Source: Selaginella moellendorffii (lineage: Eukaryota; Plantae; Lycopodiophyta). Taken from it: 64,000 nucleotides of DNA. The notes under the pieces were generated by a model, which saw nothing but the letters and a program-made list of their open reading frames with translations, was not told where the DNA came from and did no database searches. How positions within the stretch are numbered: the stretch's first letter is position 1; each line of letters begins with the position of its first letter. The translations under genes and the position numbers were made by a program. Shown here one piece after another: positions 2,210 to 52,314 of the stretch. The stretch spans positions 4,648,389 to 4,712,388 of the forward strand of contig NW_003314262.1 in assembly GCF_000143415.4 (NCBI RefSeq). The letters run 5' to 3'.

Positions 2210-4430
2210 GAGTAGCATTAGCACGATCAAGAAGCTGTTTGCAGGCGTGGACGATGCTTCCGGCTTCTCAGCTTACGACATGGGATGGATCGCACGAATA
2301 CCACATGCTCACAGAACTTGGGCCCCAGTTTCTTCGGAGCTTGGAATGGATTGTTCGCAACCAGTGCGAGGATGGGTCCTGGGATCAAGGAGAAGAAGAT
2401 GCTTAGCGGATTTGCAGCACACTGTCGTGCGTGACTGCTCTGAAAACATGGAACCGAGGGGAGCGTAACATCCAAAGAGGTAAGCTCTCTGACACCTGTG
2501 AGATACAGAGTTTTTCCTGCAGGTCTAAGCTTTATAAAGTCTCAACGGCCGTTAGTCCACAATAAACTTACAAAGGACATGGAACATCTTCTATGGGAGG
2601 GCAAATTATGACGAATCTTTTAGTCAACGTATTTGTGAACAGGGTCATGAATTAACAACACTAACTGTAGCTTTTGTCCTGATAATCAGGGTATCAAATG
2701 CTGAGTTGGAGCAGTATCTCACTTCTTTCGTCCATATATTTGAAGCGTTTCATGACCGTCCGAATTGGCAACATCTTCTCAGATATCAAAGTAGCGGTGG
2801 ATCTTTATTCTCTGTTACGCTGACGGCATACGCCCATATGCACACTGGAGACAACGAGTGCCTTCGTTTTCTAAAAGGTGCTGTTGAGGGCCCATTGATC
2901 AAGCCAAACAAGAACTGAAACTTCTGCTGCTTAAGTCAGCTGCTGCGACTTGTAGACTGGCTTGAGCATCTGGGAATTGAAAGATTCTTTAGGAAAGGGA
3001 TCGAGCAGACGTTGATTCAAGCTTTCAGGTAAACTACTTGTCACTCGAAAAGTTGTCAATAGATGTTGGAAAGGAAATGCCGCAGGTACTGGAAGTCAAA
3101 AACATCTAGAAAGCTTTGAAGACGCCGCTCTTTTGTTCCAGATTCTTCGTCGTCACGGCTACTAAGTTTCCCCAGGTAGAGTGAAGTGAAGATTTTTATA
3201 TCACAGTGACGGATTTCGTGTTGTAGACGTGCTACATCAGCGAAAATTAAGCGAGGCACACGGTTTGAAGGATCTGTCTTTGCCATCACATGTTTTCTTT
3301 CCTAGTGAGAGCAGAAAAATGCTAGTTGCGAACGAAGTGGTTTGCCTTCAACAGTAAACGTTTTCTTTACAGACGATGATTCCATGGTATAGTATAATGC
3401 ATCGGATCCAGCACATCGAGGGTATAACTAGATTTACGACAAGTATGGATTCCATAAGCATGAGGTACATATGCGATAACTTCCTGTAAATCAGTAAGTT
3501 CCTAATCGAAAATTTCCAAACGAGCTTCGATACTGGCCTTCGCAAAGTCCGACTTCAATGCTTGCCAGAAGATATATCAGAAGGATTTGCAGCACGTTAT
3601 GAGGTATCTGTCTTCGATGTTTTTCCCCCGGCTTAATTATATGCAGCTCTTGAGCCGCAGGTGGAACGAAGAGTGCGGCTTTGGACGTCTGGGTTATGCC
3701 CGACAGAAAGACGTGATCTGCCTTTTTACTGCTGCCGCAACGATGTTCCAGCCGGAACTCTCGATGGCTCTCATTGTCATGGCACAGATGAATGTTTGTA
3801 CAACTGTCATTGAGAACTTTATGGGCATGCACCATTCTCTCGACAATTTGAGAAACTTTTGCACTGCCGGGAAAATGTATTAGTAACACATCTTTAGAAG
3901 ACTTTTGAGTATTAATATGTGTCTTGTGTTCAATCACACAGATGGGATCCGTCCGCCTTGAGCTGAACGAAGACGCTAGCAATATTTTCCGAGGATTGTT
4001 TAAGACGACAGTTCAGTGTGCTTCCGAGGTACAAGGCAGAGCTAGCTTACGAGCTCAAGGACGTACCTAGAACACAGCTTTTCTAATCGCTTTTATCAGT
4101 GGGAAAGACTTTGCGATGCGTTTCTACGTGATGCAGGATGGAAGCTCACGAATCACTGTCCCAGCCTCGAGGAGTACATGGAAAACGGAATCACGTCCTT
4201 TGCGCTGGAATCGATCATCTTATCTGCAATCTTTTTCCTGGATGAGAAAGTTAAGCCATAGGCTTTCATCTGTTAATCCTTAATTATTGGATGTTTACAT
4301 GAGATCTTTCCATTCCAGTGTGAGAAATGGGGAAGTCTCATGGATTACGATGTACAGAAGGCAACGATGGAGGAGCTGGTGCTCCGGCCCAAAGCAGTGC
4401 CGTCACGTCAAACAAAATTGGAATAATCTA
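2210..4430 (+). pseudogene. Diterpene synthase (kaurene-synthase-like) pseudogene, copy 2
   Basis: Contains SAYDMGWIARIP and a QCEDGSWG-like motif in a shifted frame. The DXDD position reads ESFEDAALLFQILRRHGY followed by a stop. The alpha domain reads RWNEECGFGRLGYARQK..AAATMFQPELS..TTVIENFMG (DDxxD lost) and PSLEEYMENGITSFAL. Frameshifts and stops are present. Confidence 0.8.
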
Positions 4431-35271: not shown

Positions 35272-37131
35272 CTATTTTGCAAGAGCTCCTTCATCCTTTG
35301 CGAGCTTGAGGATGCTCGAGAAGGTCACAAAGTACGAATCCCCGAGACCGGGCTCTTTCTCGACCACCTTCTTCGCAAGCTGGGCTCCCAGGGCTGCCGG
35401 ATCGACGTCGAGCTTGCAAGCGCTGAGCAGGCTCGTCCACGCGATCTCATCGGTGGTAAACGGCATGCTCGCAATCAGATCCTCGGCCTCTCGCGTCTTT
35501 CCGGCCCGCCCCAGCGCGTCCACCATGCAGTGGTAGTGCTCCACGTTTGGCAAGATCCCTCCAAGCCTCATGGAGTGGAAGTAGTTTCGAGCCTCGCGGA
35601 CGAGGCCCAAGTGCCGGCAAGCGCTCAAAACGTTGACAAAGGTGACGGAGTTTGCAACCAGGCCGTCCATTTCCATGTCGTGGAAGAGCTCCAGCGCCAA
35701 GGGGGCATGCCCGTTTTGGGCATATGCTTGGATCATGGTGTTCCAAGTCACTACATCCAACTCGGGCATTCTATCGAACAAGAGTCTCGCGATTCCAAGG
35801 CCGCCATTGAGAGTGTAGCTCGACATCAGGGTCGTCCATGCAACCACGTTTTTGAACGGCAGGGATTCGAAGAGAGCGCGGGCCTGCTGCGTGTGGCCGT
35901 GGATGCCGTAGGCCTGCAGGAGATTCGTCCAAGATACCACGTTTTGCTCCGGCATGGTGTCGAGCATCTGTGTTGCCACGGCCAGATTCCCGTTTTGGGC
36001 ATATGCCGAGAGCATCACGGTCCAGGAGACGACGTCGCGCTGCGGCATTTGGTCGAAGATGCTCTTGGCCTCGTGGAGATACCCTTCCCGGGAATATGCC
36101 TCGACCATGGCGGTCCACACGACGCGGTCCCTGTGCGGCATTCTGTCGAAGAACTCGCGAGCTTGCTCGAGATGGTTGCCGCACTCGACGTATGCGAAAC
36201 ACATCGTCGTCCATGAAACGATTGACTTGTGAGGGATTCGGTCGAAGATCTTGCGTGCCTCGAGGAGATTCCCGAGGCGGGAATATGCTTGCAGGATCGT
36301 GTTCCAGGCGATCTCGTCCTTAACGGGCATGTCGTCGAAGATTCTCCGAGCGTCTTGGATCCTTCCGGACTCAGCGAGGGCCTGGATGATCGTCGTCCAG
36401 GAAACTTCGTTCTTTTGCGGCATCTCCTCAAAGATTTTCAAAGCCTCGTCAAGATGCCCGTTTGTGGCAAATGCTCGAACCATCGCTGTCCACGAGACGA
36501 CGGTCTTGTGCTTGATATTTTCGAAGTATTTTCTTGCCTGGAGGATATTTCCAGCTCTTGCGTATGCTGATGCGATTGTCGTCCATGTCCGGTCATTGGG
36601 GCTTTCCATCTTTTCAAGCAGCGCTCTCGCTTTGTCCATATGCCCGGTTTGGGCATATGCATTGATCATCGCGTTCCATGCCACGACATTCTTTTCAGGG
36701 ATGCTCTCGAAAATATCTAGCGCTTTCTGTATATCACCTTTTTCACCGAACGCAGCGATCATGAACGTCCACGATGCAATGTTGCATGGCGACGTATGGA
36801 GCATGTCCGTTGCTTTGTCAAGATGCCCGTTTCGGGCATATGCGGTGATCAGGATATTCCAGGAGTAGGCATTTGGATATGTGATCTCGTCGAACACGCG
36901 CTGTGCGTCGACGAGGCTCCCGCATTTGCCGTACATGTCCATGAGAAAGTTGGCCACGAATCGATCGTTGGTGAGGTCGATGGCATTGCGAATTTCCGCG
37001 TGGAGTTTCCGGCCTTGGTGAAGATCACGGCACGATTTTAAGATCTGGACGTAGTGCGAGGGCAAATCGTGATTGGGAATGCGATTGAGAGGAGAAGGTG
37101 CAATCGATGTGTCTAAAACCCAGACTTTCAT
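35272..37131 (-). CDS. PLS-class PPR protein with E domain, no DYW
   Basis: 619-aa ORF with 31-aa repeats (VSWT.M..AYAQNGH..A..IFD.MP) and HYHCMVDALGRAG..IASMPF..WTSLLSACK. Confidence 0.92.
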   Translation of the reverse strand: MKVWVLDTSIAPSPLNRIPNHDLPSHYVQILKSCRDLHQGRKLHAEIRNAIDLTNDRFVANFLMDMYGKCGSLVDAQRVFDEITYPNAYSWNILITAYARNGHLDKATDMLHTSPCNIASWTFMIAAFGEKGDIQKALDIFESIPEKNVVAWNAMINAYAQTGHMDKARALLEKMESPNDRTWTTIASAYARAGNILQARKYFENIKHKTVVSWTAMVRAFATNGHLDEALKIFEEMPQKNEVSWTTIIQALAESGRIQDARRIFDDMPVKDEIAWNTILQAYSRLGNLLEARKIFDRIPHKSIVSWTTMCFAYVECGNHLEQAREFFDRMPHRDRVVWTAMVEAYSREGYLHEAKSIFDQMPQRDVVSWTVMLSAYAQNGNLAVATQMLDTMPEQNVVSWTNLLQAYGIHGHTQQARALFESLPFKNVVAWTTLMSSYTLNGGLGIARLLFDRMPELDVVTWNTMIQAYAQNGHAPLALELFHDMEMDGLVANSVTFVNVLSACRHLGLVREARNYFHSMRLGGILPNVEHYHCMVDALGRAGKTREAEDLIASMPFTTDEIAWTSLLSACKLDVDPAALGAQLAKKVVEKEPGLGDSYFVTFSSILKLAKDEGALAK

Positions 37132-37185
37132 TTGAAGATCTCAGTCATTTCTAAAACGTATGATCATGATATGTTCTTGGGTGTG

Positions 37186-38401
<1,216 letters not shown>

Positions 38402-40488
38402 TGCACGCCAACAACCCTAAAGAGGAACCCTAAAGTTCTCCAAAGTAAGTCAACACTTAAAAGTATATATAGAAGTATGTAGACAAAACTGGCAACTACA
38501 AAATCCCGACCCCTTGGGACATAGAAAAGAAGCTCTAATATGCCCAATGACTTGAGAATATTGTGCACACAAAAGCTCATTAAAAGGAGAGTCGATATCC
38601 TTCCTAAAATAACAACACATGAGCAACTGGTCAAATATTTACGTACTTACCTCCCTGAAAGAGCACACGATACGCATGCTGGACTTTCTTATTTTTCTCA
38701 GGAGCTGCGTCAAGAATGAGCGATTTCCAATCGTTTCTAGCATTCTTTAGCCTCGTGACAACACTCAAGGTGAAGTTATTGAGGCGATCAGAATCCCATC
38801 CCCATTCAGCATCCTGAAGCTCAAGATTTGAATTCAAAGATCATGAAAAAACTAAATACCCGTGGGAAGAAAAAAGTCATGCTGTCCACTGCTGTGTGCT
38901 TCCATCCTGGATTTGTAACAATGTAGTCCCCAATGTCTTTGTTAGATGCTGCTTGAAAATGTTCCATCCCAGATTATCTATTCGCTGGCTGTGAAATCGC
39001 TGAAGCCCTAGTAGCGCGACCACGGTCGGGGAGTAGCGTCAGTGGGCTAGAGTGCGGCGCTTGCACTTCGACGCCATGCCCGTCTTGGGCATACATTGCG
39101 TTCCAAGTTGAAGATCGATCTTTCGGCAGCGCCCATCGAGCGAGAGAAGACCGCGAGCTGATTGACGCAGCATCTGCTACAGCGCTGGAAGAAGCCAGCC
39201 ACACCTTTGAACGAAAAATACCAATCGACAACCATTGCCGGTGCTGCCCTTCCTTCTTTAGATCGTTGAGAAGAGCCACGTCTTCCAGCGACACCTATGC
39301 GGCACTTCCAGTGGAAATGAGAGAATGGCTACTTTCCTTACACCACTGCGCGCTACCACAAGATCATTTTAGGGGCTTAAGAAACTGTCGCATTGTGACA
39401 TCATCCAACAGCCCAGTTCACACTTGAAAAGATATTTAAAGTTCTTTGAAGAATTGTTATATAAATTGTTTTAATGTTTTTTTTTGTAAGGCATGGGTTT
39501 TTTATTGGAGGTAGCCATGATTGTTAAAAAATTAAGAATTTCTTGGTAGTATATTTTGATTTTTTTCTATGTTAATCTTTTAGTTTTTCAATTGTAGGAT
39601 TAATAATAAATGCTTTTTTATAATTATTTAATGAAACAAAAGTGAAACTATAAAATGTTTACACTCATTTTAGTTTAAGTATGTTTTTCTTTTTACAATA
39701 TTTATTTAATAAAAAACACAAAGAAATTATTTCAATATGATGTCATAAAATAAAATAAAAATCAAAAAATAGTAAAACACCTAGAAGATGTATTCTTCCT
39801 CCCATGCACTATAGCCCAAAGATTTCTCACCTAACATTCCTCCTTAACTAAAATTGATGTAAAAAACTAAAAGAAATGATTTGAAAGACAATTTGTAAAG
39901 ATTGAAATATAAAAGAAAAGGGTTTATGAATAAAAATGTATCATTTTTTTAATTTGTTAAAAATTTTGAAATATTTAAATTTAAGTGTCCTTAGTTTTGA
40001 ATAATACTCGGTTAGGTGACTTCCTAAAAAATCTAAATTCATGAAGTTACATTTGGTATTAAAGAAGAATTGTGTTCGATTTTGTTAGTTAGTAGGACAC
40101 TATCACTAGTCAAACCTAAAAGTAAAAAATTAAACATTTATATGGAGGAAAAACGTTATTTTCCAAGAATTTTTATTCTTTATAAATAATGGACTAAATT
40201 AATATCTCATGTATATAAATAAATTCTTCAAAGAGTTCATAGTTTTATTGTTTAGTTTAATGAGGGTAGGCATTCAAAAAACATCCCAAAAAGTTTAAAA
40301 TGAATAAAGTTTTATAAGATTTTAATACAGAAAATATAATTTCACTAAACTTAATAAAATAGTAGTTTTTATTATGATTTGATTAAATTAATATTGGTTT
40401 GAGGTTATATTGTAATGTCAGAGGAAATTTTTGGAAGTAGAATATTTTTAAGATGGAAGATCTAAGTAGGTCCAACTTCCAAGATACA

Positions 40489-42183
40489 CTAGGTATCAGG
40501 CTGTTGAGGCTTCACTGTAAACTTGAGAAGTGTAAGTTCGTGGAGTCGACCTTGCACAAGAAATCCAGCCATGGCAATATAGGCCTCAGGGTTCTCAGGC
40601 TCTCGCATCATCACCTCCTCTGCTGCCACCATCCCCTGCTCCATGTCGCCGTGGATACGGCACGCGTTCATCACCGAGGTCCAGACCACCTCGTTTGCAA
40701 CACAGGGCATGGCATACAAGAGCTCGATTGCATCACTGATCCGCCCGGTCCTTGCCAGGAGATCGATCACGCATCCAAAGTGCTCCCTCGCTGGCTTGAT
40801 CTCGAACTCCTGGATCATCGACACGAATTGTTTGATGCCGTGATCAATGAGCCCGCCGTGGCTGCACGCTGCGAGCACGCCCAAGAACGTAATCGCATCG
40901 GGAGAGATCTCCTTCTCGTCGGTCATCTCACGGAAAAGATCTAGCGCATCGCAAGAATGCCCATTCTGGGCAAATGCTGCGATCATGGAGCTCCACGCCA
41001 CTGGATCTCTTGTCACAACTGAATCAAACAACCGCTTTGCGAAATCTATCATCCCGGATCTCGCGTAGAGATTGATCATCGCAGTGCCGATGACAGCATC
41101 GCCCTTGAGCATCGAGGGATTGATCAACGAGTGGATGTGTTGCCCAGTCTCGATCGCGCCCACGCTCGCGCACGCATCCAGGACCGTCGCGTAGGTCTTG
41201 GCATTGGGCGCGAGATCCATCGCCGAGAAGGTCTCGATCGCGGCAACGCCATGCCCGTTCTGGGCATACGCCGCGATCATCGCGTTCCAGGCCACCAGAT
41301 CCCGCAAGAACAGCCAATGATCGAAGATCTCTTTCGCGCGATCGATCTTCCCGCAGCGGCCATAGAGCGTGAGGAGAGCGGTTGCAAGGATCTGGCAGTG
41401 GAGCAGCCCCTCTTGCGCGATCCGGCAGTGGAGCCACTCCCCCTGGCGGAGATCCCTCGCCAGGGCGCTGGCATCTACCGCGGTGACGAACGCGATCTCG
41501 TCCGGTGGAGAATCCATCGCCCGGAAGATCTCCAGCGCCTCCCTGGGTCGCGAATTCTGGGTGTATGCCGCGATGAGAGACGTCCAGCAGCAAGCGTCCC
41601 TCTCGCCCTGGTAATCGTCGAAAGCCCTCTTCGCCTCCTCCAAGCGCCCAAATCCGCCATAGCTCCTCACCAGCGCAGTGGCGAGGACGCGATCGCTGGA
41701 GCACTCGATTCGCGTGCGATCGTGGAGCGAGCGCAGGGATTCCAGGCTGGGGATCCCGCGGAGGAGGAGCGTGAGGATGGGGCGATGGATCGGCCCAGCA
41801 CCCAGCTCCCACATCCGATCGAAGAGCTCCAGTGCCTCGTCCAAGTGCCCGGCCTGGGCATACGCCGCGATGACGATGTTCCAGGAGTGGGAGTTCTTCC
41901 AGGGGATGGAATCGAAGGCGCGGCGCGCGTCGGCGAGGCTGGAGCAGCGCGCGTAGGTCTGGACGAGGAGATTGGCGAGGAAGATGTCGTCCTTGAATCC
42001 ACTGCGCGTGAGATGTGCGTGGATTCGCTTGGCGGAGTCGAGGGATTTCTCCCGCCCGCATTGGTGGAGGAGCGGCGGATAGGAGGCGCGATCCGCGAAG
42101 AGGTTGCGCTCCAGCGCCTCCAGCGCCGCTGGAAGGCTTGTTTGTAACAGTCGCCGCGCGGCATTTGTAGAGAGCGCGGGCAT
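40489..42183 (-). CDS. PLS-class PPR protein with E domain
   Basis: 564-aa intronless ORF with WNAMIAAYAQNGH repeats and HFGCVIDLLARTG..AMPC..WTSVMNACRIHGD. Confidence 0.92.
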   Translation of the reverse strand: MPALSTNAARRLLQTSLPAALEALERNLFADRASYPPLLHQCGREKSLDSAKRIHAHLTRSGFKDDIFLANLLVQTYARCSSLADARRAFDSIPWKNSHSWNIVIAAYAQAGHLDEALELFDRMWELGAGPIHRPILTLLLRGIPSLESLRSLHDRTRIECSSDRVLATALVRSYGGFGRLEEAKRAFDDYQGERDACCWTSLIAAYTQNSRPREALEIFRAMDSPPDEIAFVTAVDASALARDLRQGEWLHCRIAQEGLLHCQILATALLTLYGRCGKIDRAKEIFDHWLFLRDLVAWNAMIAAYAQNGHGVAAIETFSAMDLAPNAKTYATVLDACASVGAIETGQHIHSLINPSMLKGDAVIGTAMINLYARSGMIDFAKRLFDSVVTRDPVAWSSMIAAFAQNGHSCDALDLFREMTDEKEISPDAITFLGVLAACSHGGLIDHGIKQFVSMIQEFEIKPAREHFGCVIDLLARTGRISDAIELLYAMPCVANEVVWTSVMNACRIHGDMEQGMVAAEEVMMREPENPEAYIAMAGFLVQGRLHELTLLKFTVKPQQPDT

Positions 42184-42213
42184 TTACATTGCAAATGGGA
42201 GGGGATAACGGGC

Positions 42214-42384
42214 AATGCCGCGGGTACCGCACTGCACAGTTCGAATAGTACCGCACGGTACGCTATTAAGTAGCTTGCAACCGATTGTACTCCTTTTTCA
42301 GCTTCAGCTTGAACAGTACCGAATGGCTCGTTACTATAGTGCCGCGCGGTATACAGCCTGAGCTCAACAGTACCGCGCGGCACT
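42214..42384. repeat. GC-rich palindromic motif array with a perfect 14-bp inverted repeat
   Basis: AGTGCCGCGCGGTA (42338-42351) pairs with TACCGCGCGGCACT (42371-42384). Related GTACCGCACGGTAC at ~42248. Decayed paralogue at ~47535-47665. Confidence 0.75.
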
Positions 42385-42394
42385 CTTCTTTTTT

Positions 42395-42975
42395 TCATGC
42401 TATGACTTTGTAAGGATTAAAAATTCCATTTGGAGCGAGCATAGCTTTCATCTTTCTCATGAGTTCTATACCTGCGAGAAGAAGAGCAAAAGTTTCCAGA
42501 GCTTTTTGGAAGAAGTCGAATTTACCGTCTGGGGACTCCAGTGAATTGCGTGGGCTTTCATGAAGCCCAGCCCGTGCTCGGCGCTTACACTTCCTTTGTG
42601 CACGGCAGTCCACTCGTACACGAATGGTTCTATCTTTGCGAGAAGCTGTTCGTCAAGTCCAGAGGTTTTAGAGACGAAAACACTTGGAGCGGAGATGATT
42701 TCCATCGCCGAGGCTATGATCCTTCTGTTCAAAAGAACTTAAGTCTACATTTCACTATTTGTTACCGAGCCGTTCACGAAGAAGTTTTTCGTGCGAGCAA
42801 AACAAGAGAGTTGTTCTATAAACAGTACCAATCTGCCCGAGTAGCTCGATCGTCACATCGGTATGCTAAATGCCCTTCTACAAGACAAAGTAAAACAATT
42901 AGCGGAAAGAAATAGAAATCGATACATAGCTTCTGGTATCACTCCCGGCGAATCACGCAAGGCGATTTGAAAGCG
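42395..42975 (-). pseudogene. Deletion remnant fusing a VPS26 5' fragment to a D2HGDH 3' fragment
   Basis: 42395-42783 matches the D2HGDH 3' end ([16 protein letters not shown]; NPYKVIA) with small deletions. 42781-42975 matches VPS26 at 51067-51415. Confidence 0.9.
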
Positions 42976-43063
42976 TAATATAAACAAAGATCATTACGTG
43001 GCACAATGTGGAAGTGACACCTGTCACATTATTCTCGTATCTACTTAGAACCGTATACGCGTA

Positions 43064-43607
43064 TTAAAAGGTTGTGGAAGCAAAGCTTGGACGAAACTCT
43101 TTGCAGCATTCGATGTTTCCGTTGTCATTGTAGAGGCAATCTTTGAGGTCGATGGTGCTGGTCACAGTGCTTCCGTCCTTGGCCTTGCAAGTTGCACTGA
43201 AATCGCGTTCATTGAAAAAGAGATCTGCTTCTAAATGGAATTCGCTGCATTTTGAGTAGTACCCAACGTTGGGGTAAAAAGACTCGCCGTAGTTGTTGCA
43301 AGTGAGCGTCCCGTCGGGCTTCACCTGGAGGCACCATGCCAAGTCGATGCTCGTGGGAGCATAGAAGCGGCCTGAGCTCCTTTGGCACTCGAGCACCAGC
43401 CTTGTGGCGCCGAGTACTTTCGGGTCACGGCATGATTTGTGGAATCCTCCACACTGCACAATGGTCAAACAAGCGACACACGCTCCACTTTAAGTACTAA
43501 GAAGAACAATATCATCGACTCACAGTGGCCTGTGATGGAGTGCCCATGAGAAGCAGGACCATGAAGGAGGTGAGGAGGAGGAGAGGAAACAGGGGCGATG
43601 ATGCCAT
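43064..43607 (-). CDS. Secreted cyanovirin-N homologue (CVNH) lectin; 2 exons, 157 aa
   Basis: Exon 1 (43524-43607) MASSPLFPLLLLTSFMVLLLMGTPSQAT is a signal peptide. GT-AG intron 43454-43523. Exon 2 has two CVNH half-repeats (GFHKSC..LECQRSSG..TSIDL..DGTL; SKC..SATCKAKDG..TSTIDLKDCLYNDNGNI). TATAAAA at 43651-43657. Confidence 0.85.
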
Positions 43608-43774
43608 GGCTTTGAGAAACGTGGATGCAAGCGTGTTCTCAGCTCTGCGTTTTTATAGGGCTAGCTTTTGCTAGGCTCATGAATGATTGAAAACAACATC
43701 TGACCAGCTGTGTGGGACCTGCAAACATTTAATTAATATCAATTTCCAAAAGGCTGTAGATCCAATATATCTTG

Positions 43775-45480
43775 GTTGTCATTTTGTCCAGTGGGAGAGC
43801 CCAGATTATAGGCAATAGAGCTTGCTTTGGATATGGGAACATCTGACTAGACGTCTCCATTTTGAAGATTGGGAAATTGATGCATTTTAAATAGGGTCTT
43901 ATTTTGGTATTATTTTAATGTGGTCCACCAAATATTAAATATATGGTCCCAAACTAACAGTTGAGCATGATGTAGATGTCAAGCTTTCTCTCACTGCTTC
44001 TTTTAATTGCTTATTGTTAATTAATTATGGCATAAAATAAATTCATTTCTTTTAAATATAGCTAATGAATAACACCTTGAATATGGAGATAATGTTTAAC
44101 TACCTTATTGAAATATTATCATAATACTATAAAAATATGATTTACTTAAGTATTATATACTAAAAAAACTTATATAACTATAACAATTAACTTAAATTTA
44201 TATTAAATATTACATAATAGAATATACTAAATATTCAGATATATTCTTATGTATTTGATAAAACTTAGAACTTTTCAATTATAAATTTCAAATTTCATAT
44301 TTTTAGGAGCTCATCATAAACAGAAAGAAAGATGACATAATTATTAATAAAATTATAAAGGAAGAAGAAGAGGAGATGACACAAAATCCTAAAAACCATA
44401 TAGCATATGCATGTATATAGTAAGGTTTGAGTTTGAATCATATTATAGATAATGATAATGAAATACACTCTAAGACATACAAAGAGATGGCAAATATATG
44501 ATATCATTTCTAAAATATTTTAAATCCACGATATATAATTGTCATTTTGTCCAGCAAGAGAGCCTAGATTATAGGGTAATGGAGATTGCTTTGGGAATTT
44601 AGATCAAAGCCACTGATTCCACTAAAAATCTAATTAATGCATTTTAAATTTGAGAGTTTATACTTTGGAGGATCTTATTTTGGCATAATTTTGATGTGGT
44701 CCACAAAATATTAAATATATAGTCATTACCAACCAACTATTAGTCCCAACAAATAAGCTGAGCATGATATAGCTGTCAAGCTTTGACATAAAGATGGTTG
44801 TAAAAAAAGTCATTTTCATAATAAGATGATAGTTTATCCTATTACCTGTTTTATTTTTTCTCTCTGATTGCTTCTTTATATTGAATATTTTTAATTAATA
44901 AGATAATTTTTTTATGTTTATCTGATGAATAAAACCTTGAATATGATTATGAAGGTAATGCTAGAGGATAATTAACAACATTATTAAATTATTTTCATAA
45001 TACTATATAAAAAATATTTCAATTGTATTTAAATTTAAGTATTATATGCTATGAAAACTTTTTACAATTATAAAAAATAATTTAAATTATATTAACTATT
45101 ATATAATAAAATATACTAAAATGTTTAGGTATATTCTAGATATACATTTTTGCTTAAGCAAAAAAAAAAAAATTAACTCAAGGATTGTAGATTTTAACAT
45201 CTTTCTGAGCAATAGAATTTTGAATGATAATTAACCCTTAACAGATCTTGATAAATCTACATTATAAATTTCTAATTTTTGGTATTTTAAGAACTCGTCA
45301 TCAAGAGAAAGGAAGACAATAAAAATACTGATAAAATTATAAAGAAAAGAAGATTTGTGTTGAACAAAATGTCCTAAAAACCCTACTTTTATACACCATG
45401 CATAATAGGTAGGTTTTGGGTTTGAATCCAATAAATAAACTTGAATCCTATTGTAAACAATGCAAATACATGATATCAGC
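43775..45480. repeat. Tandem duplication (~0.75-0.9 kb unit) of AT-rich sequence upstream of CVNH
   Basis: GTCATTTTGTCCAG..GAGAGCC.AGATTATAG at 43778 and 44541; TCTTATTTTGG..ATGTGGTCCAC.AAATATTAAATATAT at ~43897 and ~44673; TGAGCATGAT.TAG.TGTCAAGCTTT twice. Confidence 0.8.
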
Positions 45481-46377
45481 TCCTCCCCTTTTATGCCAAA
45501 CTAAGTGGCAACTAAAGTGATGGGCTTGAGTGGATAAATACTAATAGAAATCTAACCAACTCAGAAAAATGGGAAACAGGCTTCCAAGTTAGTTGAGTAC
45601 CTGAGCCAATTGACTGGATAATAGAGCTTGTGATACCTGTACATAGAATCAAAGAATTGGTCGCAACTTTAAATCTAGTTTATTAGTGGTGAAACACAAG
45701 TAAAATTAGAAGAGGTGATATAGTATACAAGGATTAAGTTAGTGAGAACAATTTGCAACATGGTGATAAATAGTTTAAACACAAAAAGGTGTTAGTGAAC
45801 TTTCTTATGACAAGAATTTAAAATAATTGCATAAATGGTAAGATTAAGTATTAGAGGAAAAAAGTATGATTAAAGAGTAGTGAAGAATAAAGTGTGATGT
45901 GTCAAGAGTGGCGAGAATTGGTATAAGAAAATTCACAGTAGAAAGAAAAAGATCAATCCAATTATTATATTGATGAGAAATAAAACATTGAAAATACTAC
46001 TCAAGAGTTCTCACCATCTAGTATATATAGCTAATTATGTTGATGAAAAAGTCAATCCCAAAACTAATGGAATTCCAAAAGAAATGAATTCATGAACTTC
46101 TTGAACAAATGAATCATTGGCTTGAGTTACTTCAATCAACAATTTGAGGCAGTGATCAAACCATTTCAATCTAATGCAAAGAAATACTAGTAATTAAGGT
46201 AAAAATCTATCAACTATATATAGGAGAGAATTATGTGAGATAATTGATTTAGAAGTAAAAAGAATTAAAGAGTGTATAATATTGAAGAGAGAAAGAGGGA
46301 GTGAAATAATTATAAGTAAAAAATCAGCTTACAGACTAGTTAAACTAGTTTAACTGGTTCTTAGCCTTGTTGACTCA

Positions 46378-47394: not shown

Positions 47395-47535
47395 GCTGTG
47401 GATTGCCCGCATTGGTGGAAGAGGTTGCGTTTCAGTGCCTCCAGCGCCGTTGGAAGGCTTCTTTGAAACAGTCGCCGCGCGGCACTTGCAGAGAGCGCGG
47501 GCATTTACTCGCTTACATTGCAAATGGGAGGCAAT
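47395..47535 (-). pseudogene. Truncated duplicate of the 5' end of the 40489-42183 PPR
   Basis: GCCTCCAGCGCCG.TGGAAGGCTT.TTTG.AACAGTCGCCGCGCGGCA.TTG.AGAGAGCGCGGGCATTTAC matches 42115-42188; the rest is missing. Confidence 0.85.
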
Positions 47536-47690
47536 AATACCGTGCGGTATACAGCTCGAATAGTACCACGCGGTACGCTACTTAAGATCCAACAGTACTG
47601 CCCGGCACAATTTTTTCATCTTAACGGGTAGTGTCGCGCGGTGTACAGCTTGAGCTCGACAGTGTACGTGTCTTTTCTTTTCGTTTTTTT

Positions 47691-50015
47691 TCACGCTATG
47701 ACTTTGTAGGGATTAAGAATTCCGTTTGGGTCGAGCATAGCTTTCATCTTTCTCATCAATTCTACCTGCGAGAAAAGCAAAAGTTTCCAGAACTTTGAGA
47801 AGAAGTCGGATTTACCGTCTCGGGACTCCTGCTGTAGTGGATTGCGTGGGCTTTCATGAAGCCCAGCCCGTGCTCGGCGCTTACGCTGCCTTTGTGCGCC
47901 GCCGTCCACTCGTACACGAATGGTTCTATCTTTGCTAGGAGCTGTTCGTCAAGTCTAGAGATCTTAGAGACGAAAACACTTGAAACTTGGAAGAAAAAGC
48001 TTGCCTTTTCGTCGTAGTCTGGAGCGGAGATGTTTAGATGAAGATTTCCATCGCCGAGATGACCGTACGCTACCACTGTGGCTAATCCTTCTGTTCAAAA
48101 GAGCTTTTTAAGTCTATAGACAATTTCACTATTCGTTACCGAGTCGTTCACGAAGAATTTCCACGAGATTGTAGAGGTCTTTGATCGGTATTGAGAGATC
48201 GTATTTGTACACTGCTCCAGCCTTCCCCAGGGCTTCGGCAATTCCCTGAAACAAAGATGGAGAAAAGATTGTAACGAGGAAGTTGTAGAAACCATGCCTC
48301 TCTTATATGCCAGAAATTTGATATTTGAGTGTTGTCCTGTGCGATTGTGCCGTCGACAACGAGTCCTTGTGTAAGAACAGTCTCCACAAAGTTATCTAGC
48401 TTCTCCCTGTAAAAAAAACATAAGTACAGACATCCTAGGCGCGTGGATGTAATAGCTTACTTATCATGTGACTGGTTACTGCCTGTGGTTTCTATGAGAA
48501 GGTAAAATTTTTCCTTGGCATCGGGAAGTGGATGACGATCTCCGGAGTGTTTTAGCACCTAAAAGAAACTGATTTAGATAAAACATGAAATGGATCCCAT
48601 ACAAGTTCTTCGCTTACCATATCAAGCGCAAACGAATCAATAAACTCAAATGCCGACAGCACTTCGCCGAGATGTTTCCTTGCTTCGAGAAGCATTTTCT
48701 GTGGAGGAAACATCAGCAAACATGCGAAAAAGAGGATCACAATGTCGTTTCTTACCTGGCAGCTTGTGTAGTCTGTGCACGCCAGAAATCCCACATTCAC
48801 GGAAGGTAGCTTTTGTGGTGTCAGCACAGCCACTTTAGTCACCACTCCAAGTGTTCCCTCGGCTCCTGCTTAAACGCTTTGTAAGCAGTGATATGGAACT
48901 GCTTTGTAGAAATGAAACATACCAATGAAGAGCTGCTTCAAATCGTAGCCTGTGTTGTCCTTTCTTAAACTCGATAGCATATCCAGAATTGTTCCGTCTG
49001 ATAATACAACTTCAAGGCCTACAAGAAAGAAGAAAGTTTGAGACTTAGAAAGAGCAAAGCTACGATTTCTACCGAGAATGTTGCCATGCAGTGACCCGTA
49101 TCTTATCAAACGAAGGCCACCTGCGTTTGTCGAAACGTTTCCTCCGATCTGGCAGCTTCCTTTGGCTCCGAGGTCCAAGGGAAACATGAAACTTCGAGGG
49201 GATTAAGCCAAGATTAAACTGAAGTAAGTTTATACCCTTTGTCCGCAAGAAATTTGTCCAGTGTTTCCAAAATGCAGCCTGCTTCACAGATGAGAATACC
49301 ACTGACCTGCAAGGCTCGAGATTCGAATGGATGAGAAATCTAGAGAAACGAGAAGTCCCACCTCATCGAAGGAAATAATCGAGTTCATTGCTCCAAGATT
49401 GACTATAACCTGGTTGGATCATTCCAAAACTAGAGCTTGAAACAGATAAGTTTTTTTCATACCTCATCAAATACAGGAACGCTTCCTCCAACAAGCCCCG
49501 TGTTGCCACCTTGAGGAACAACAGCAATTCTTCTCGAACTGCTGTACTTCAGGATCTCGGCTACCTGGCCTGGAGGAACTAAGAACTTTGGAGAGAAAAC
49601 GTTTAATCGAGACACTCACTTGATTTGAAGATTGGGGGCGAAGGAGGAGCTGAGCGGATCCTTTGAACTTCCTCATCCAGTCCGTGTTGGCCACTTCCAA
49701 TTCATCCTTGTCCACAACCAGGCCCTTCGATCCCACTATCCCGGAGAAGTGCTTGATATCTTGATCATCCAGTGTTGCAAAGCGTTCATCTCTTACAACT
49801 TTGGAGGACGCTGGAACGCTGTAAGCTCGACAATTCTCTAGCCACTTCTTCCCTGGAGAAACTCGAGCGATCAAGTTTTGGAATGATAGAGAAAACTCAT
49901 GAAAGAAGAATGTGTACCGAGAGGTGTCCAGCGTCGTTGAGCTAGAATTCTCCTCATCTCCAGTAGAGCGAGCCCTAATAGAAAGTCTAGTAAGTAGTGT
50001 GCATCGTTTATTCAT
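47691..50015 (-). CDS. D2HGDH: Mitochondrial D-2-hydroxyglutarate dehydrogenase (FAD-linked oxidase); multi-exon
   Basis: [109 protein letters not shown]. Confidence 0.95.
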
Positions 50016-50055: not shown

Positions 50056-51481
50056 CTAAAACGGTCGAGCTCTATACATTGTCACCTCTTGTTGCTTGAA
50101 GTAGCGTCGATCTTCCTCGTCCACGAGCACCAGGTTGAGGTAGTACTTGACGCTAAATTTGTTGTTCACGTTGCGATACGTTGGCGTGAGATTGAAAGGA
50201 CTCAGAAACAAGCGAATTGGAACGGATTCTCCTGCCATAAAACAAAGTTAAAAAGAGGAACTTTCAGTCGATCATCAAGGACATACCACGAACAGGAGCT
50301 CCATCCATAAGTTCATACTTTGCAATCGTCTCGGTCTCGTTGTAAGTGTTTGGCCCCGAGCCAGTGGACTCCCGGCGTCTTACTTCAATCTCCATGTGTC
50401 GGATCTTGAGCCGGACGAGGAGAAAGAAAATCTTGCCAAGGATCACGTCCTTCAAGTGATATCTGAAAGGAAAAACTTGTTTTTCTCCAAGAGCTAACCA
50501 ACGTGAAGGCTTACTTGCTTTTGTTGTACTCGAACTCTATGTGTAGACAATCCTCAATCCCAACCTCCATCTAAGCACAAGTTGGTTTTTTTTAAAATAA
50601 AAAAGCAGTAAATTGTCGAAAAAAAAGAGAAGTACCACCTTGATAGAATTGTTGATTGCGGGAGGAGCCGAGAAATTGTGTACCTGGTTATGCAGGAAGT
50701 TAAGAAATAAGTCAGCCTTGTTTGCTCAAGATCATACCCAGAAGTCCTTGCTCTCTGTAAGATTCGACAAATAGTTTCTGCTAACAGTGACTTTCAGTAT
50801 ATACCTACAAGAAAGAAAGAAAAAAGCATTGACAAAAAGAGAGAGAAAAAAACATGAACACTAACCTCAATCTCACGTTTGTGCCGTTGTAGGATTCATA
50901 CGGCATTTCCACCGCTGAGAACTCAAAAGGATAGACTTTTCTCTCCGCAATCTCTCCCAAGACATCCAGCTCCCTCACTGGAAAAAGTTGGAGTATATAG
51001 AACTAGAAACTAAAGCTACCAAGTGATGTGAAATCGTAGTAATTCCCGCGATCGAAATAGAGCTCTGTGAAGTTTTTCGTGTGAGCAAAAAAAGAGAGCT
51101 GTTCTATAAAACAGTACCAATCTGCCCGAGTAGCTCGATCTTCACACCGGTATGCTCAAGCTTTCTTCCAGGCAATGGATCGATACGAACCTGTTGTTCC
51201 ATGCTAGAAAAATTCCATGACGAGCTAAACAGCCATACCTCTCCATGAAGGCTCTCTTGGCTGTGAAAAATCGGCAGACCATTGCCCTTCTACAACACAA
51301 TGTAAAACCATTAGCGGAAAGAAGAGGAAGAAATACAGAGAAATCGATACATAGTTTCTTCTGGTATCACTCTCGGCAAGCACGATCGCGATCACGCAAG
51401 GCGATTTGAAAGCGCCGACGATTAGATCCTGCCAGAGAAAGAGATCATATCAGTGTAAGAACAAAGATCACACCACACCAT
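50056..51481 (-). CDS. VPS26: Retromer subunit VPS26; multi-exon
   Basis: ATG-only first coding exon (51479-51481), LIVGAFKSPC, KLEHTGVKIELLGQI, YPFEFSAVEMPYESYNGTNVRL, MEVGIEDCLHIEFEYNK, KYELMDGAPVRGESVPIRLFL, DEEDRRYFKQQE. Confidence 0.95.
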
Positions 51482-51614: not shown

Positions 51615-52093
51615 TCAAGCAAAGCCATTGTCGTTATAGAGGCAATCCTTGAGGTCAATGGTGCTGGTCACAGCGCTTCCATCCTTGTCATTGCAAGTTG
51701 TAGTGAAATCGTGCTCTGTGAAGAAGCGATCTGCTGCTATATAGAATTCGCTGAATTTTGAGTACCGCCAAACTGTGGGGTAAACCTCACTGCAAGTGAA
51801 CGTCTTGTTGGGGCTAACCTGGATGCACCATGCCAAGTTGATGCTCGTCAGAGCATAGAGCCGGCCTGTGGTCCTTTGGCACTTGAAATTTGGTGCTGAC
51901 GACTGGCAAGGAGCGGCATGAGGTGGAATCCTGAACTCTGCACAATGTTCAAACAAGCCACACACATTCATATAAGCCAATGCCACTATAAGTACTAAGA
52001 AGAACAATATCATGGACTCACAGTGGCCTGTGATGGAGTGCCCATGAGCAGCAGGACCATGGAGAAGCTAAGAAGGACAGCAAACGATGCCAT
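51615..52093 (-). pseudogene. CVNH lectin paralogue, probably a pseudogene
   Basis: Signal exon 52022-52093 (MASFAVLLSFSMVLLLMGTPSQAT) and the same intron position, but spliced exon 2 is out of frame. The C-terminal NIECCKEFRPS and the TATA-box segment are deleted relative to the 43064-43607 copy. Confidence 0.75.
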
Positions 52094-52314
52094 GACTTTG
52101 AGAAACATGAATGGCTAGCTCTTGGCCAAGCTCATTACTGCTTTGACAGCTCTCTAGGTAATAACATCAAATTCAAAAAGGCTGTGATCCACCCAGTCTC
52201 GAATAAAAGCAACTTTGGTGATGGGAACACCTGAGATCAAAACCAGCACCACCAGGCAGTGTTATATCTATTTGAGAAGATTAGCTAATTAATGGATTTC
52301 AAAGCTGTTGACAA

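What the first reader, a model, noticed from the sequence alone, without database searches (positions are those of the whole stretch)
43064..43607. Secreted, 10-cysteine cyanovirin-N homologue in a land plant
Seen: an intact two-exon gene with TATA box, signal-peptide exon (missed by the ORF track) and two ~50-aa half-repeats with the cyanovirin-N pattern (F..SC, L..EC....G....SIDL, N.DG.L). The mature protein has 10 Cys and insertions between and within the repeats (NNYGESFYPNVGYY; EADLFFNERD). Established: cyanovirin-N (4 Cys) binds high-mannose glycans and is antiviral; CVNHs occur mainly in cyanobacteria and filamentous ascomycetes, with a patchy seed-free plant distribution (e.g. the fern Ceratopteris). 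Inference: an apoplastic, disulfide-stabilised anti-microbial lectin, possibly horizontally acquired. The second NxDG motif is roughly kept (NDNG) while the first is altered (VKPDG), so it may have one functional sugar site or a new specificity.
Basis: partly seen in the sequence, partly recalled or inferred. Interest (0 to 1): 0.8.

Follow-up and report, generated by a model that had tools for sequence, protein, structure and literature searches.

The report
Annotated Selaginella cyanovirin-family lectin gene
This is a real, spliced and expressed two-exon gene of the spikemoss Selaginella moellendorffii for a small secreted, cysteine-rich protein of the cyanovirin-N lectin family, but the gene is already annotated and listed in a published census of plant lectins, so it is an ordinary member of a known family.

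Summary
On the minus strand there is a TATA box, an 84-nt signal-peptide exon (43607-43524), a 70-nt GT-AG intron and a 390-nt exon (43453-43064). The gene encodes a 157-aa protein with a CVNH domain (Pfam PF08881, E 2e-16) and 10 Cys. Contigs of two public runs skip exactly 43454-43523, so it is spliced as read. An AlphaFold2 model (pLDDT 80.6) matches only CVNH structures (TM 0.85-0.88).

It is not new. The product is letter-for-letter SELMODRAFT_437973 / XP_002962178.1 / UniProt D8QSH7. Gene 437973 is listed as 'cyanovirin' in Van Holle & Van Damme 2019, which counts 27 such gene models in S. moellendorffii. That paper also finds the family in liverwort, mosses and ferns, but not in seed plants.

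The 'extra' cysteines are mostly a subtype trait: an 8-Cys frame is shared with bacterial, fungal and other Selaginella relatives. Only the terminal pair looks lycophyte-specific.

Recent horizontal acquisition is not supported. Three Selaginella CVNH lineages share the intron position, and the locus is syntenic in both haplotypes. An ancient transfer remains open.

Other points: a decayed tandem pseudogene lies at 52093-51615, and the two haplotype alleles differ unusually much (dN/dS about 1). Other readers of this scan noted two more CVNH genes elsewhere in this genome.

The parts
43651..43657 (-). TATA box (TATAAAA), 44-50 nt upstream of the ATG
   Evidence: Read from the sequence. The stretch containing it is missing from the pseudogene copy.
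43524..43607 (-). Exon 1: 28 codons for the signal peptide. It has a 17-residue hydrophobic core and SQA at -3..-1 before Thr28.
   Evidence: It is identical to the N-terminus of P0003. Contigs of X4 and X5 cover 43524-43598. No signal-peptide predictor was available, so the cleavage site is judged by inspection only.
43454..43523 (-). Intron, 70 nt, GT..AG, phase 0
   Evidence: Contigs in runs X4 and X5 skip exactly these 70 bases (table 5). The same junction appears in the deposited proteins P0001 and P0003.
43064..43453 (-). Exon 2: 129 codons plus a TAA stop (43066-43064)
   Evidence: Pfam CVNH E 2.2e-16.
43103..43453 (-). CVNH domain: two pseudo-repeats (mature residues 1-52 and 65-117) joined by the linker NNYGESFYPNVG
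   Evidence: Pfam match with two stretches. The AF2 model has strands 8-14, 18-24, 31-37, 42-44, 50-52, 69-77, 82-90, 96-102, 107-110 and 113-116. The top 25 Foldseek PDB hits are all CVNH, TM 0.85-0.88. The linker residues 58-62 have pLDDT below 50.
43067..43102 (-). C-terminal tail KEFRPSFASTTF, predicted disordered, with a 3-aa indel between the haplotypes. It may be a propeptide.
   Evidence: pLDDT is below 50 for residues 120-129. The propeptide idea is inference only.
43029..43063 (-). 3' UTR, minimum extent. The haplotype-2 transcript contig runs to 42829.
   Evidence: The X4 contig covers 43029-43211 and the X5 contig covers 42829-43453 (table 8).
51615..52093 (-). Decayed tandem paralogue (pseudogene). 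Landmarks: ATG 52093, donor 52021, exon 2 from 51937.
   Evidence: It is 76% nt identical to the live gene. The alignment shows 2-nt and 8-nt deletions (frameshift), Cys1 to Ser, Cys69 to Phe, and a 42-nt deletion of the CC tail. If spliced like the live gene it hits a premature stop at 51850-51848. No gene is called there in the public annotation.

Best explanation
This is the nuclear gene SELMODRAFT_437973 (LOC9662497) of Selaginella moellendorffii. It is one of about two dozen gene models of the plant 'cyanovirin' lectin family in that genome.

Shown here: it is transcribed from a TATA promoter, a 70-nt intron is removed, and it is translated into a 157-aa precursor. The domain adopts the CVNH fold, which is two pseudo-symmetric halves, each a three-stranded sheet plus a hairpin.

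Inferred: the 28-residue signal peptide sends it into the secretory pathway, and the domain is locked by five disulfides. Two of these would be the canonical ones (Cys8-Cys23, Cys69-Cys89). Two would probably close each hairpin (Cys41-Cys52, Cys106-Cys116). One would tie the N- and C-termini together (Cys1-Cys117).

Inferred function: an extracellular or vacuolar lectin that binds mannose-type glycans of microbes. The site built from the N-terminal strand of repeat 1 and the NDNG hairpin of repeat 2 is probably the better preserved one.

The gene is inherited vertically within the plant. It arose with a tandem duplicate that has since decayed, and its two haplotype alleles have diverged fast at the protein level.
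For: Identity:
- The spliced product equals P0003, that is EFJ37438.1 / XP_002962178.1 / UniProt D8QSH7.
- L001 (scaffold GL377566.1), reverse-complemented, equals window 33064-53607 with 0 mismatches.
- Gene 437973 is listed as 'cyanovirin' in Suppl. Table 1 of PMC6362431.

Family and fold:
- Pfam CVNH, 60.9 bits.
- phmmer against PDB finds CV-N constructs at E 1e-7 and Cyt-CVNH 5k79 colinear over residues 2-114.
- AF2 gives pLDDT 80.6 and pTM 0.71.
- Foldseek's top 25 hits are all CVNH, including CrCVNH 2jzj at rmsd 1.8. The ESM Atlas also gives CVNH clusters.

Expression and splicing: joints skipping 43454-43523 occur in X4 and X5. The X4 contigs are identical to the window. The X5 contig carries the 9-nt insert of the other haplotype's allele.

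Plant gene, not a contaminant: the second haplotype locus L002 has the same order Vps26 - FAD-oxidase - CVNH - FAD-oxidase fragment - PPR, and is 93.8% identical over 12.7 kb.

Family within the plant:
- P0017 and P0028 are further S. moellendorffii 'cyanovirin-N homolog' proteins. Each has a signal peptide and 10 Cys.
- All three lineages have a phase-0 intron 0-2 codons before the first Cys.

Cysteine frame:
- C8, C23, C41, C52, C69, C89 and C106 are at least 90% conserved in 31 relatives, and C116 is invariant in A3.
- Bacterial relatives are arrays of four-Cys half-repeats, often in odd numbers. That favours pairing within each half-repeat.

Fast evolution: between haplotypes the mature protein has 12 nonsynonymous and 3 synonymous differences (dN 0.040, dS 0.038) plus a 3-aa indel, with all Cys kept. 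Neighbouring genes have dN 0-0.01.
Against: - No sugar binding, localisation or disulfide map was or could be tested here.
Two relatives (P0026, P0029) keep the Cys41/Cys116 equivalents but lack those of Cys52/Cys106, which fits the proposed hairpin pairing less well.
- The signal peptide has no basic n-region and was not scored by a predictor.
- Residues equivalent to the CV-N domain-B site are poorly conserved, and the first hairpin has VKPDG instead of N.NG. The protein may therefore bind weakly, bind another ligand, or not bind sugar at all.
- dN/dS near 1 also fits relaxed constraint.
- The runs used are only guessed to be RNA. The intron-less joint is what argues for RNA.
Confidence: 0.85

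Rival explanations
1. This lineage of Selaginella CVNH genes was acquired separately by horizontal transfer from bacteria that carry multi-repeat CVNH proteins. The other Selaginella CVNHs would then come from a different, fungal-like source.
For: After the allele, the best hits in 1.84 billion representatives are bacterial or metagenomic multi-repeat CVNH proteins (E 2e-10 to 1e-6, for example Arenimonas oryziterrae WP_022969483). These rank ahead of the Selaginella paralogues (E 2e-5 and 2e-4) and of fungi. The ML tree places this gene on the bacterial side and the other two Selaginella lineages on the fungal side of a 94/93 split. CrCVNH of a fern scores only 18.5 bits by sequence.
Against: The split is not starred and the branch to this gene is very long (2.3), so its place is unsure. 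The sequences were also chosen as hits to this gene, which biases the sample. The AU test does not reject all Selaginella CVNHs as one clade (p 0.20). The three lineages share a signal peptide starting MAS/MAP, a phase-0 intron at the same junction, and the extra terminal Cys pair. The gene has plant-type structure and synteny in both haplotypes. No bryophyte or fern sequences could be retrieved for the tree.
Confidence: 0.08
2. The protein keeps the CVNH scaffold but is not a mannose-binding lectin. It would be a disulfide-rich secreted defence or signalling peptide with another ligand, or a lectin of altered specificity with at most one working site.
For: The first hairpin reads LQVKPDG instead of the I.N.NG consensus. 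Positions equivalent to the CV-N domain-B binding residues named in PMC9725752 (E41, N42, N53, T57, R76) are mostly replaced in the alignment. Surface residues change freely between the alleles.
Against: The second hairpin (YNDNG) keeps the invariant Asn109 and Gly112. By my recollection, which I could not check in a held paper, other CVNHs with a single working site still bind mannose oligosaccharides. All characterised members of the fold found by the structure search are lectins.
Confidence: 0.2
3. The mature protein is vacuolar rather than apoplastic. The disordered, variable C-terminal tail (KEFRPSFASTTF) would be a C-terminal propeptide acting as a vacuolar sorting signal, as in some other plant lectins and chitinases.
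For: The tail lies after the last Cys, has pLDDT below 50 and carries an indel between alleles. There is no ER-retention motif. Short C-terminal sorting propeptides are known in plant defence proteins, but this last point rests on my own knowledge and was not checked here.
Against: There is no sequence rule for such signals, and nothing was tested. The paralogue P0017 ends directly at the CC pair without a tail.
Confidence: 0.2
4. Assembly contaminant: a fungal or bacterial gene wrongly placed in a plant scaffold.
For: The family is commonest in fungi and bacteria.
Against: The gene sits between plant genes (Vps26, FAD-oxidase, PPR, PDR transporter) on a 6.2-Mb scaffold, and again in the syntenic second haplotype. 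It has a spliceosomal intron that is removed in transcript-like contigs from several studies labelled with one organism. It also has a decayed tandem copy beside it.
Confidence: 0.01

Closest known systems
SELMODRAFT_437973 / XP_002962178.1 / UniProt D8QSH7 (S. moellendorffii 'Cyanovirin-N domain-containing protein'), and its haplotype-2 allele SELMODRAFT_406227
   Same: The first is the identical sequence. The allele is 91% identical by BLASTP (93% by phmmer) with the same splice junction and the same neighbouring genes.
   Different: The first does not differ at all: this is the same gene. The allele has 12 amino-acid changes and a 3-aa insert in the tail.
Other S. moellendorffii 'cyanovirin-N homolog' proteins (XP_024520435.1 = P0028, XP_024521273.1 = P0017)
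   Same: They share a signal peptide, a single CVNH domain, 10 Cys including an N-terminal and a C-terminal extra Cys, and a phase-0 intron at the signal-peptide/domain junction.
   Different: Identity is only 31-34%. They lack the EADLFFNERD insertion, and P0017 also lacks the long linker and the C-terminal tail. P0028's intron is GC-AG.
Cyanovirin-N of Nostoc ellipsosporum (PDB 2EZM, 3EZM and mutants)
   Same: The fold is the same (TM 0.85-0.88 to monomeric forms, rmsd about 2.3). Both have two pseudo-repeats, and the canonical Cys pair in each repeat is conserved.
   Different: Identity is 22-25%. CV-N has 4 Cys, no signal-peptide exon or intron, and no long linker. By sequence, this protein's repeat 1 resembles CV-N repeat 2, so it aligns end to end with the circular permutant 1N02. 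The sugar-site residues of domain B are mostly replaced.
CrCVNH of the fern Ceratopteris richardii (PDB 2JZJ), the classic plant CVNH
   Same: It is a plant CVNH with the same fold (Foldseek E 8.5e-8, rmsd 1.8, 24% identity).
   Different: It is very distant in sequence (phmmer 18.5 bits, E 0.017 against PDB). Orthology was not established.
Bacterial multi-repeat CVNH proteins (e.g. Arenimonas oryziterrae WP_022969483.1, and metagenomic P0004 and P0005)
   Same: These are the best sequence matches outside Selaginella (33-36% identity, E down to 2e-10). They share the four-Cys half-repeat and Gly/Tyr-rich linkers between half-repeats.
   Different: They are arrays of 3-12 half-repeats in proteins of 200-1170 aa. 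They are bacterial and have no intron. They lack the terminal Cys pair.

Membership tests
CVNH (cyanovirin-N homologue) family, Pfam PF08881 | Match to the family HMM above the curated gathering score | tested here: met
   60.9 bits against a cut-off of 24.5, E 2.2e-16, for exon 2. The full protein P0003 scores 59.9 bits.
CVNH (cyanovirin-N homologue) family, Pfam PF08881 | Two tandem pseudo-repeats of about 50 residues | tested here: met
   The Pfam hit has two matched stretches. Both halves align to the repeat consensus GS...SC...G..L.A.C...G....S.DL..C..N.NG.L.C.
CVNH (cyanovirin-N homologue) family, Pfam PF08881 | One conserved Cys pair per repeat (Cys8-Cys22 and Cys58-Cys73 in CV-N) | tested here: met
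   Cys8/Cys23 and Cys69/Cys89 occupy these columns. The CV-N connectivity is as cited in PMC11952781. Actual bond formation cannot be tested here.
CVNH (cyanovirin-N homologue) family, Pfam PF08881 | CVN fold: two pseudo-symmetric domains, each a triple-stranded sheet plus a hairpin from the other repeat | tested here: met
   The AF2 model (pLDDT 80.6) has ten strands in the expected order. The top 25 PDB matches are all CVNH proteins, TM 0.85-0.88 normalised by target length. This is a predicted structure, not a solved one.
CVNH (cyanovirin-N homologue) family, Pfam PF08881 | Binding of Man-alpha-1,2-Man or high-mannose glycans | not testable with these tools
   Only residue comparison was possible. 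The repeat-2 hairpin keeps N109 and G112, while the repeat-1 hairpin is altered.
Plant 'cyanovirin' lectin family (Van Damme classification) | CVNH-domain gene of a seed-free land plant, as catalogued in plant genomes | tested here: met
   Gene id 437973 of S. moellendorffii is listed as cyanovirin. The paper counts 27 genes in this species, 2 in Marchantia, 16 in Sphagnum, 1 in Physcomitrella, 2 in Azolla, 11 in Salvinia and none in seed plants (PMC6362431 supplements; main text).
Secreted proteins (classical secretory pathway) | Cleavable N-terminal signal peptide | tested here: inconclusive
   A 17-residue hydrophobic core and small residues at -3/-1 (S-Q-A) are seen by eye. No predictor was available and no experiment was done. 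The paralogues have similar N-termini.
Horizontally acquired gene (recent transfer into Selaginella) | Absent from related plants, nested within a donor clade with support, and lacking host-type gene structure | tested here: not met
   The family is reported across bryophytes, a lycophyte and ferns. The tree is unresolved and the AU test does not reject one Selaginella clade (p 0.20). The intron position is shared among paralogues. An ancient transfer into early land plants is neither shown nor excluded.

The most novel reading that the evidence does not exclude
This CVNH lineage may be an independent bacterial-to-lycophyte acquisition, distinct from the fungal-like CVNHs of the same plant. 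Its two haplotype alleles (dN/dS about 1, with dN 4-8 times that of neighbouring genes) may be kept apart by diversifying or balancing selection in an arms race with microbes.
Probability: 0.1. Interest if true: 0.5.

Novelty: already known. Interest (0 to 1): 0.15.

Why it matters
As a discovery it matters little. The gene, its family assignment and the family's distribution in seed-free plants are already in public databases and in a 2019 paper.

What remains open is biochemical, because no lycophyte CVNH has been characterised. This subtype has eight framework cysteines plus a terminal pair, and may be an unusually stable version of an antiviral and antifungal lectin scaffold.

The expansion of the family in Selaginella, the fast-diverging alleles and the birth-and-death pattern at this locus fit a defence role. 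That role could be tested directly.

Tried and rejected
- Word-based protein searches found only Selaginella proteins and a few fungal CVNHs. This was true with exon 2, with a 10-sequence profile and with the paralogue P0017. No bryophyte or fern sequence was found, so I could not test the family's plant-wide distribution myself and it rests on PMC6362431.
- Exact look-ups of P0001 and P0017 were not on record. I used P0002 and P0060 instead.
- The tree of 36 domains is poorly resolved: 19 of 33 inner branches are open. I do not rely on it to name a donor.
- Disulfide connectivity could not be measured because model coordinates are not exposed. Co-occurrence of cysteines among relatives gives mixed signals: P0026, P0029 and P0009 on one side, arrays with odd numbers of half-repeats on the other.
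- The paper PMC5009269 (Cyt-CVNH) is not held. The sugar-site residues of CV-N domain A are therefore from memory only and are not used as evidence.
- Contamination was rejected (see rival explanations).
- The joined protein was never typed into a tool. It was joined only inside scripts, to compare it with the stored record P0003 and to count substitutions. P0003 was then used wherever the whole protein was needed.

Full report
**What is there.** Window 43064-43607 holds a gene on the minus strand.
- A TATAAAA box lies at 43657-43651 and the ATG at 43607.
- Exon 1 (43607-43524) encodes 28 residues with a 17-residue hydrophobic core ending in SQA-T.
- A 70-nt intron (43523-43454) begins GTGAGT and ends TGTGCAG.
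- Exon 2 (43453-43064) encodes 129 residues and a stop.
- Exon 2 has ten cysteines, at residues 1, 8, 23, 41, 52, 69, 89, 106, 116 and 117.

**Is it real.**
- Pfam's CVNH model (PF08881) matches exon 2 at 60.9 bits (cut-off 24.5, E 2.2e-16) in two stretches.
- phmmer against PDB sequences finds cyanovirin-N constructs (E 1e-7) and Cyt-CVNH 5k79, colinear over residues 2-114.
- By sequence, repeat 1 of this protein resembles repeat 2 of CV-N. It therefore aligns end to end with the circularly permuted CV-N 1N02. This only reflects the internal repeat.
- An AlphaFold2 model built on a 31-sequence alignment has mean pLDDT 80.6 and pTM 0.71, with ten strands in the expected order.
- The top 25 Foldseek matches in the PDB are all CVNH proteins (TM 0.85-0.88 by target, rmsd about 2). 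They include the fern CrCVNH 2jzj. The next match has E 0.07.
- The ESM Atlas searches also return only CVNH clusters.

**Expression and splicing.** Twenty public runs of one organism, from seven studies, hold part of the stretch. I laid four of them on 42700-43900.
- Contigs of X4 and X5 carry a joint that skips exactly 43454-43523 (CT..AC on the + strand, that is GT..AG on the gene's strand), at contig depths of 6127 and 877.
- The X4 contigs are identical to the window.
- The X5 contig has 20 differences and a 9-nt insert behind 43093. That is the allele of the other haplotype.
- One low-depth contig of X16 keeps the intron, so it is DNA or pre-mRNA.
- The runs are only guessed to be RNA. 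The intron-less joint is what shows a spliced transcript.

**Identity.**
- The word search with exon 2 returned one cluster of three S. moellendorffii proteins.
- One of them, P0003, is letter for letter the spliced model. Its accessions are EFJ37438.1, SELMODRAFT_437973, XP_002962178.1 and UniProt D8QSH7 ('Cyanovirin-N domain-containing protein').
- Its locus on scaffold GL377566.1, reverse-complemented, equals window 33064-53607 without a mismatch. The window is therefore S. moellendorffii.
- P0001/P0002 (SELMODRAFT_406227, 91% identity by BLASTP, 93% by phmmer) lies on scaffold GL377570.1. It has the same neighbours (Vps26, FAD-oxidase, CVNH, FAD-oxidase fragment, PPR) and is 93.8% identical over 12.7 kb. 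It is the allele in the second assembled haplotype.

**Already known.** Van Holle & Van Damme 2019 (PMC6362431) searched 38 plant genomes for lectin domains.
- Their Supplementary Table 1 lists gene 437973 of S. moellendorffii as 'cyanovirin'.
- Their Table 2 counts 27 cyanovirin genes in this species, 2 in Marchantia, 16 in Sphagnum, 1 in Physcomitrella, 2 in Azolla and 11 in Salvinia.
- The text says the domain was lost in gymnosperms and angiosperms. It repeats the suggestion of Percudani et al. [quoted passage not shown]
- Two further CVNH genes of this genome were also noted by other first readers of this scan.

**The cysteines.** In the alignment of the protein with 30 relatives, C23 is invariant and C8, C41, C52, C69, C89 and C106 are at least 90% conserved. 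C116 is invariant among single-domain relatives.
- 28 of the 37 other proteins found by the exhaustive search contain half-repeats with four cysteines.
- The eight-Cys frame is therefore a trait of a whole CVNH subtype found in bacteria, fungi and Selaginella. Only Cys1 and Cys117 are extra.
- The other two Selaginella lineages also have an extra N-terminal and an extra C-terminal cysteine (P0017 ends ...NLECC, and P0028 has a Cys in its tail).
- I infer five disulfides: 8-23 and 69-89 (canonical; CV-N connectivity as cited in PMC11952781), 41-52 and 106-116 closing the hairpins, and 1-117 tying the ends together.
- Bacterial arrays with odd numbers of four-Cys half-repeats favour pairing within half-repeats.
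- Two relatives that keep only the 41 and 116 equivalents do not fit this scheme. I had no access to model coordinates, so the scheme is unproven.

**Sugar sites.** The hairpin of repeat 2 (LYNDNG) keeps the invariant Asn109 and Gly112. The hairpin of repeat 1 reads LQVKPDG, without the Asn and with an extra residue. In CV-N the repeat-1 hairpin (E41, N42) belongs to the domain-B site together with N53, T57 and R76 (PMC9725752). The equivalents here are mostly replaced (alignment).

**Origin.** The exhaustive phmmer search of 1.84 billion representatives gave only 38 hits at E 0.001 or better.
- After the allele, the best hits are bacterial or metagenomic multi-repeat CVNH proteins (E 2e-10 to 1e-6, 33-36% identity; one is from Arenimonas oryziterrae). 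These rank ahead of the Selaginella paralogues and of fungal proteins.
- An ML tree of 36 domains puts this gene with the bacterial set, and the two other Selaginella lineages with fungi, across a 94/93 branch.
- That branch is unstarred, the gene's own branch is very long (2.3), and the sample was chosen by similarity to the query.
- The AU test does not reject a single Selaginella clade (p 0.20).
- Against separate origins, all three lineages have a signal-peptide exon followed by a phase-0 intron 0, 1 or 2 codons before the first cysteine. The junctions are SQAT|CGGF here, TSK|ACEGF with a GC-AG intron in the P0028 gene, and VIE|AQCDF in the P0017 gene.
- I conclude that the gene descends vertically within the plant. 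A recent transfer is not supported. An ancient one is neither shown nor excluded.

**Local history.**
- A copy on the same strand, about 8.5 kb away in the window, is 76% identical in DNA.
- That copy lacks the stretch with the TATA box, has lost Cys1 and Cys69, and carries 2-nt and 8-nt deletions. Spliced like the live gene, it stops at 51850-51848. It has also lost 42 nt encoding the CC tail.
- No gene is annotated there, and it is also present in the other haplotype.
- Fragments of the Vps26 5' region and of the FAD-oxidase 3' end lie downstream of the live CVNH gene.
- A block CVNH-Vps26-FAD-oxidase was therefore once duplicated in tandem and then decayed reciprocally.

**Allelic divergence.**
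- Between the haplotypes the mature protein shows 12 nonsynonymous and 3 synonymous differences (dN 0.040, dS 0.038, ratio about 1) plus a 3-aa indel. All cysteines are unchanged.
- Neighbouring coding stretches have dN 0-0.01 and dS about 0.01-0.02. For example, the 1692-nt PPR reading frame has dN 0.0054 and dS 0.0126.
- The counts are small. The pattern fits either relaxed constraint on surface residues or diversifying selection, as is common for secreted defence proteins.

**Verdict.** The finding is an already annotated and published member of the plant cyanovirin lectin family. Function, location and disulfide pattern remain inferences. The horizontal-transfer idea is not supported for any recent event.

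Noticed in passing
window 51615-52113 (minus): An unannotated pseudogene copy of the CVNH gene. The TATA stretch is missing, Cys1 and Cys69 are lost, there are frameshifting 2-nt and 8-nt deletions, a premature stop falls at 51850-51848, and a 42-nt deletion removes the C-terminal CC. The other haplotype has it too (L002 about 1457-1916).
   Followed up: yes
window 42097-42686 vs 47418-47982; 42781-42975 vs 51069-51414: Remnants of an old tandem block duplication. A 3' fragment of the FAD-oxidase gene (78% identity) and pieces of the Vps26 5' region lie just downstream of the live CVNH gene. The full Vps26 and FAD-oxidase genes lie downstream of the dead CVNH copy, so the decay was reciprocal.
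   Followed up: partly
window 43736-45428: A very AT-rich block (GC 25% over 44001-46000) upstream of the gene, with degenerate direct repeats offset by about 0.8-1 kb (68-74% identity).
   Followed up: no
window 43064-43453 vs L002 10001-10581: The two haplotype alleles of the CVNH gene differ by 9% in protein (dN 0.040, dN/dS about 1), while neighbouring genes differ by 0-2% (dN up to 0.01). Both alleles appear as spliced contigs in public runs: X4 has the window's form and X5 the other.
   Followed up: partly
window 43632-43634 (minus); L002 10001-10003: The RefSeq model of the haplotype-2 allele (P0002, 169 aa) starts at an ATG 27 nt upstream. In this window that codon is ACG, so the extension is probably an annotation artefact rather than a real longer N-terminus.
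   Followed up: partly
L003 3085-3139; L004 about 3414-3704: The paralogue encoding P0028 has a 55-nt GC-AG intron (donor AAG|GCAAGT) at the same signal-peptide/domain junction. The P0017 gene has a longer intron there, with the same ...tgtgcag acceptor context as this gene.
   Followed up: yes
proteins P0004-P0040: Bacterial and metagenomic CVNH proteins are arrays of 3 to 12 four-cysteine half-repeats, often in odd numbers, joined by Gly/Tyr-rich linkers. One (P0034) combines them with cysteine-rich N- and C-terminal regions.
   Followed up: no
window 35272-42183 (minus; L001 11425-18336): The public gene model here is a 1517-aa product that combines PPR repeats with JAB/RPN11 domains. In the other haplotype a separate 243-aa PPR model is called instead. 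This may be a fused annotation.
   Followed up: no
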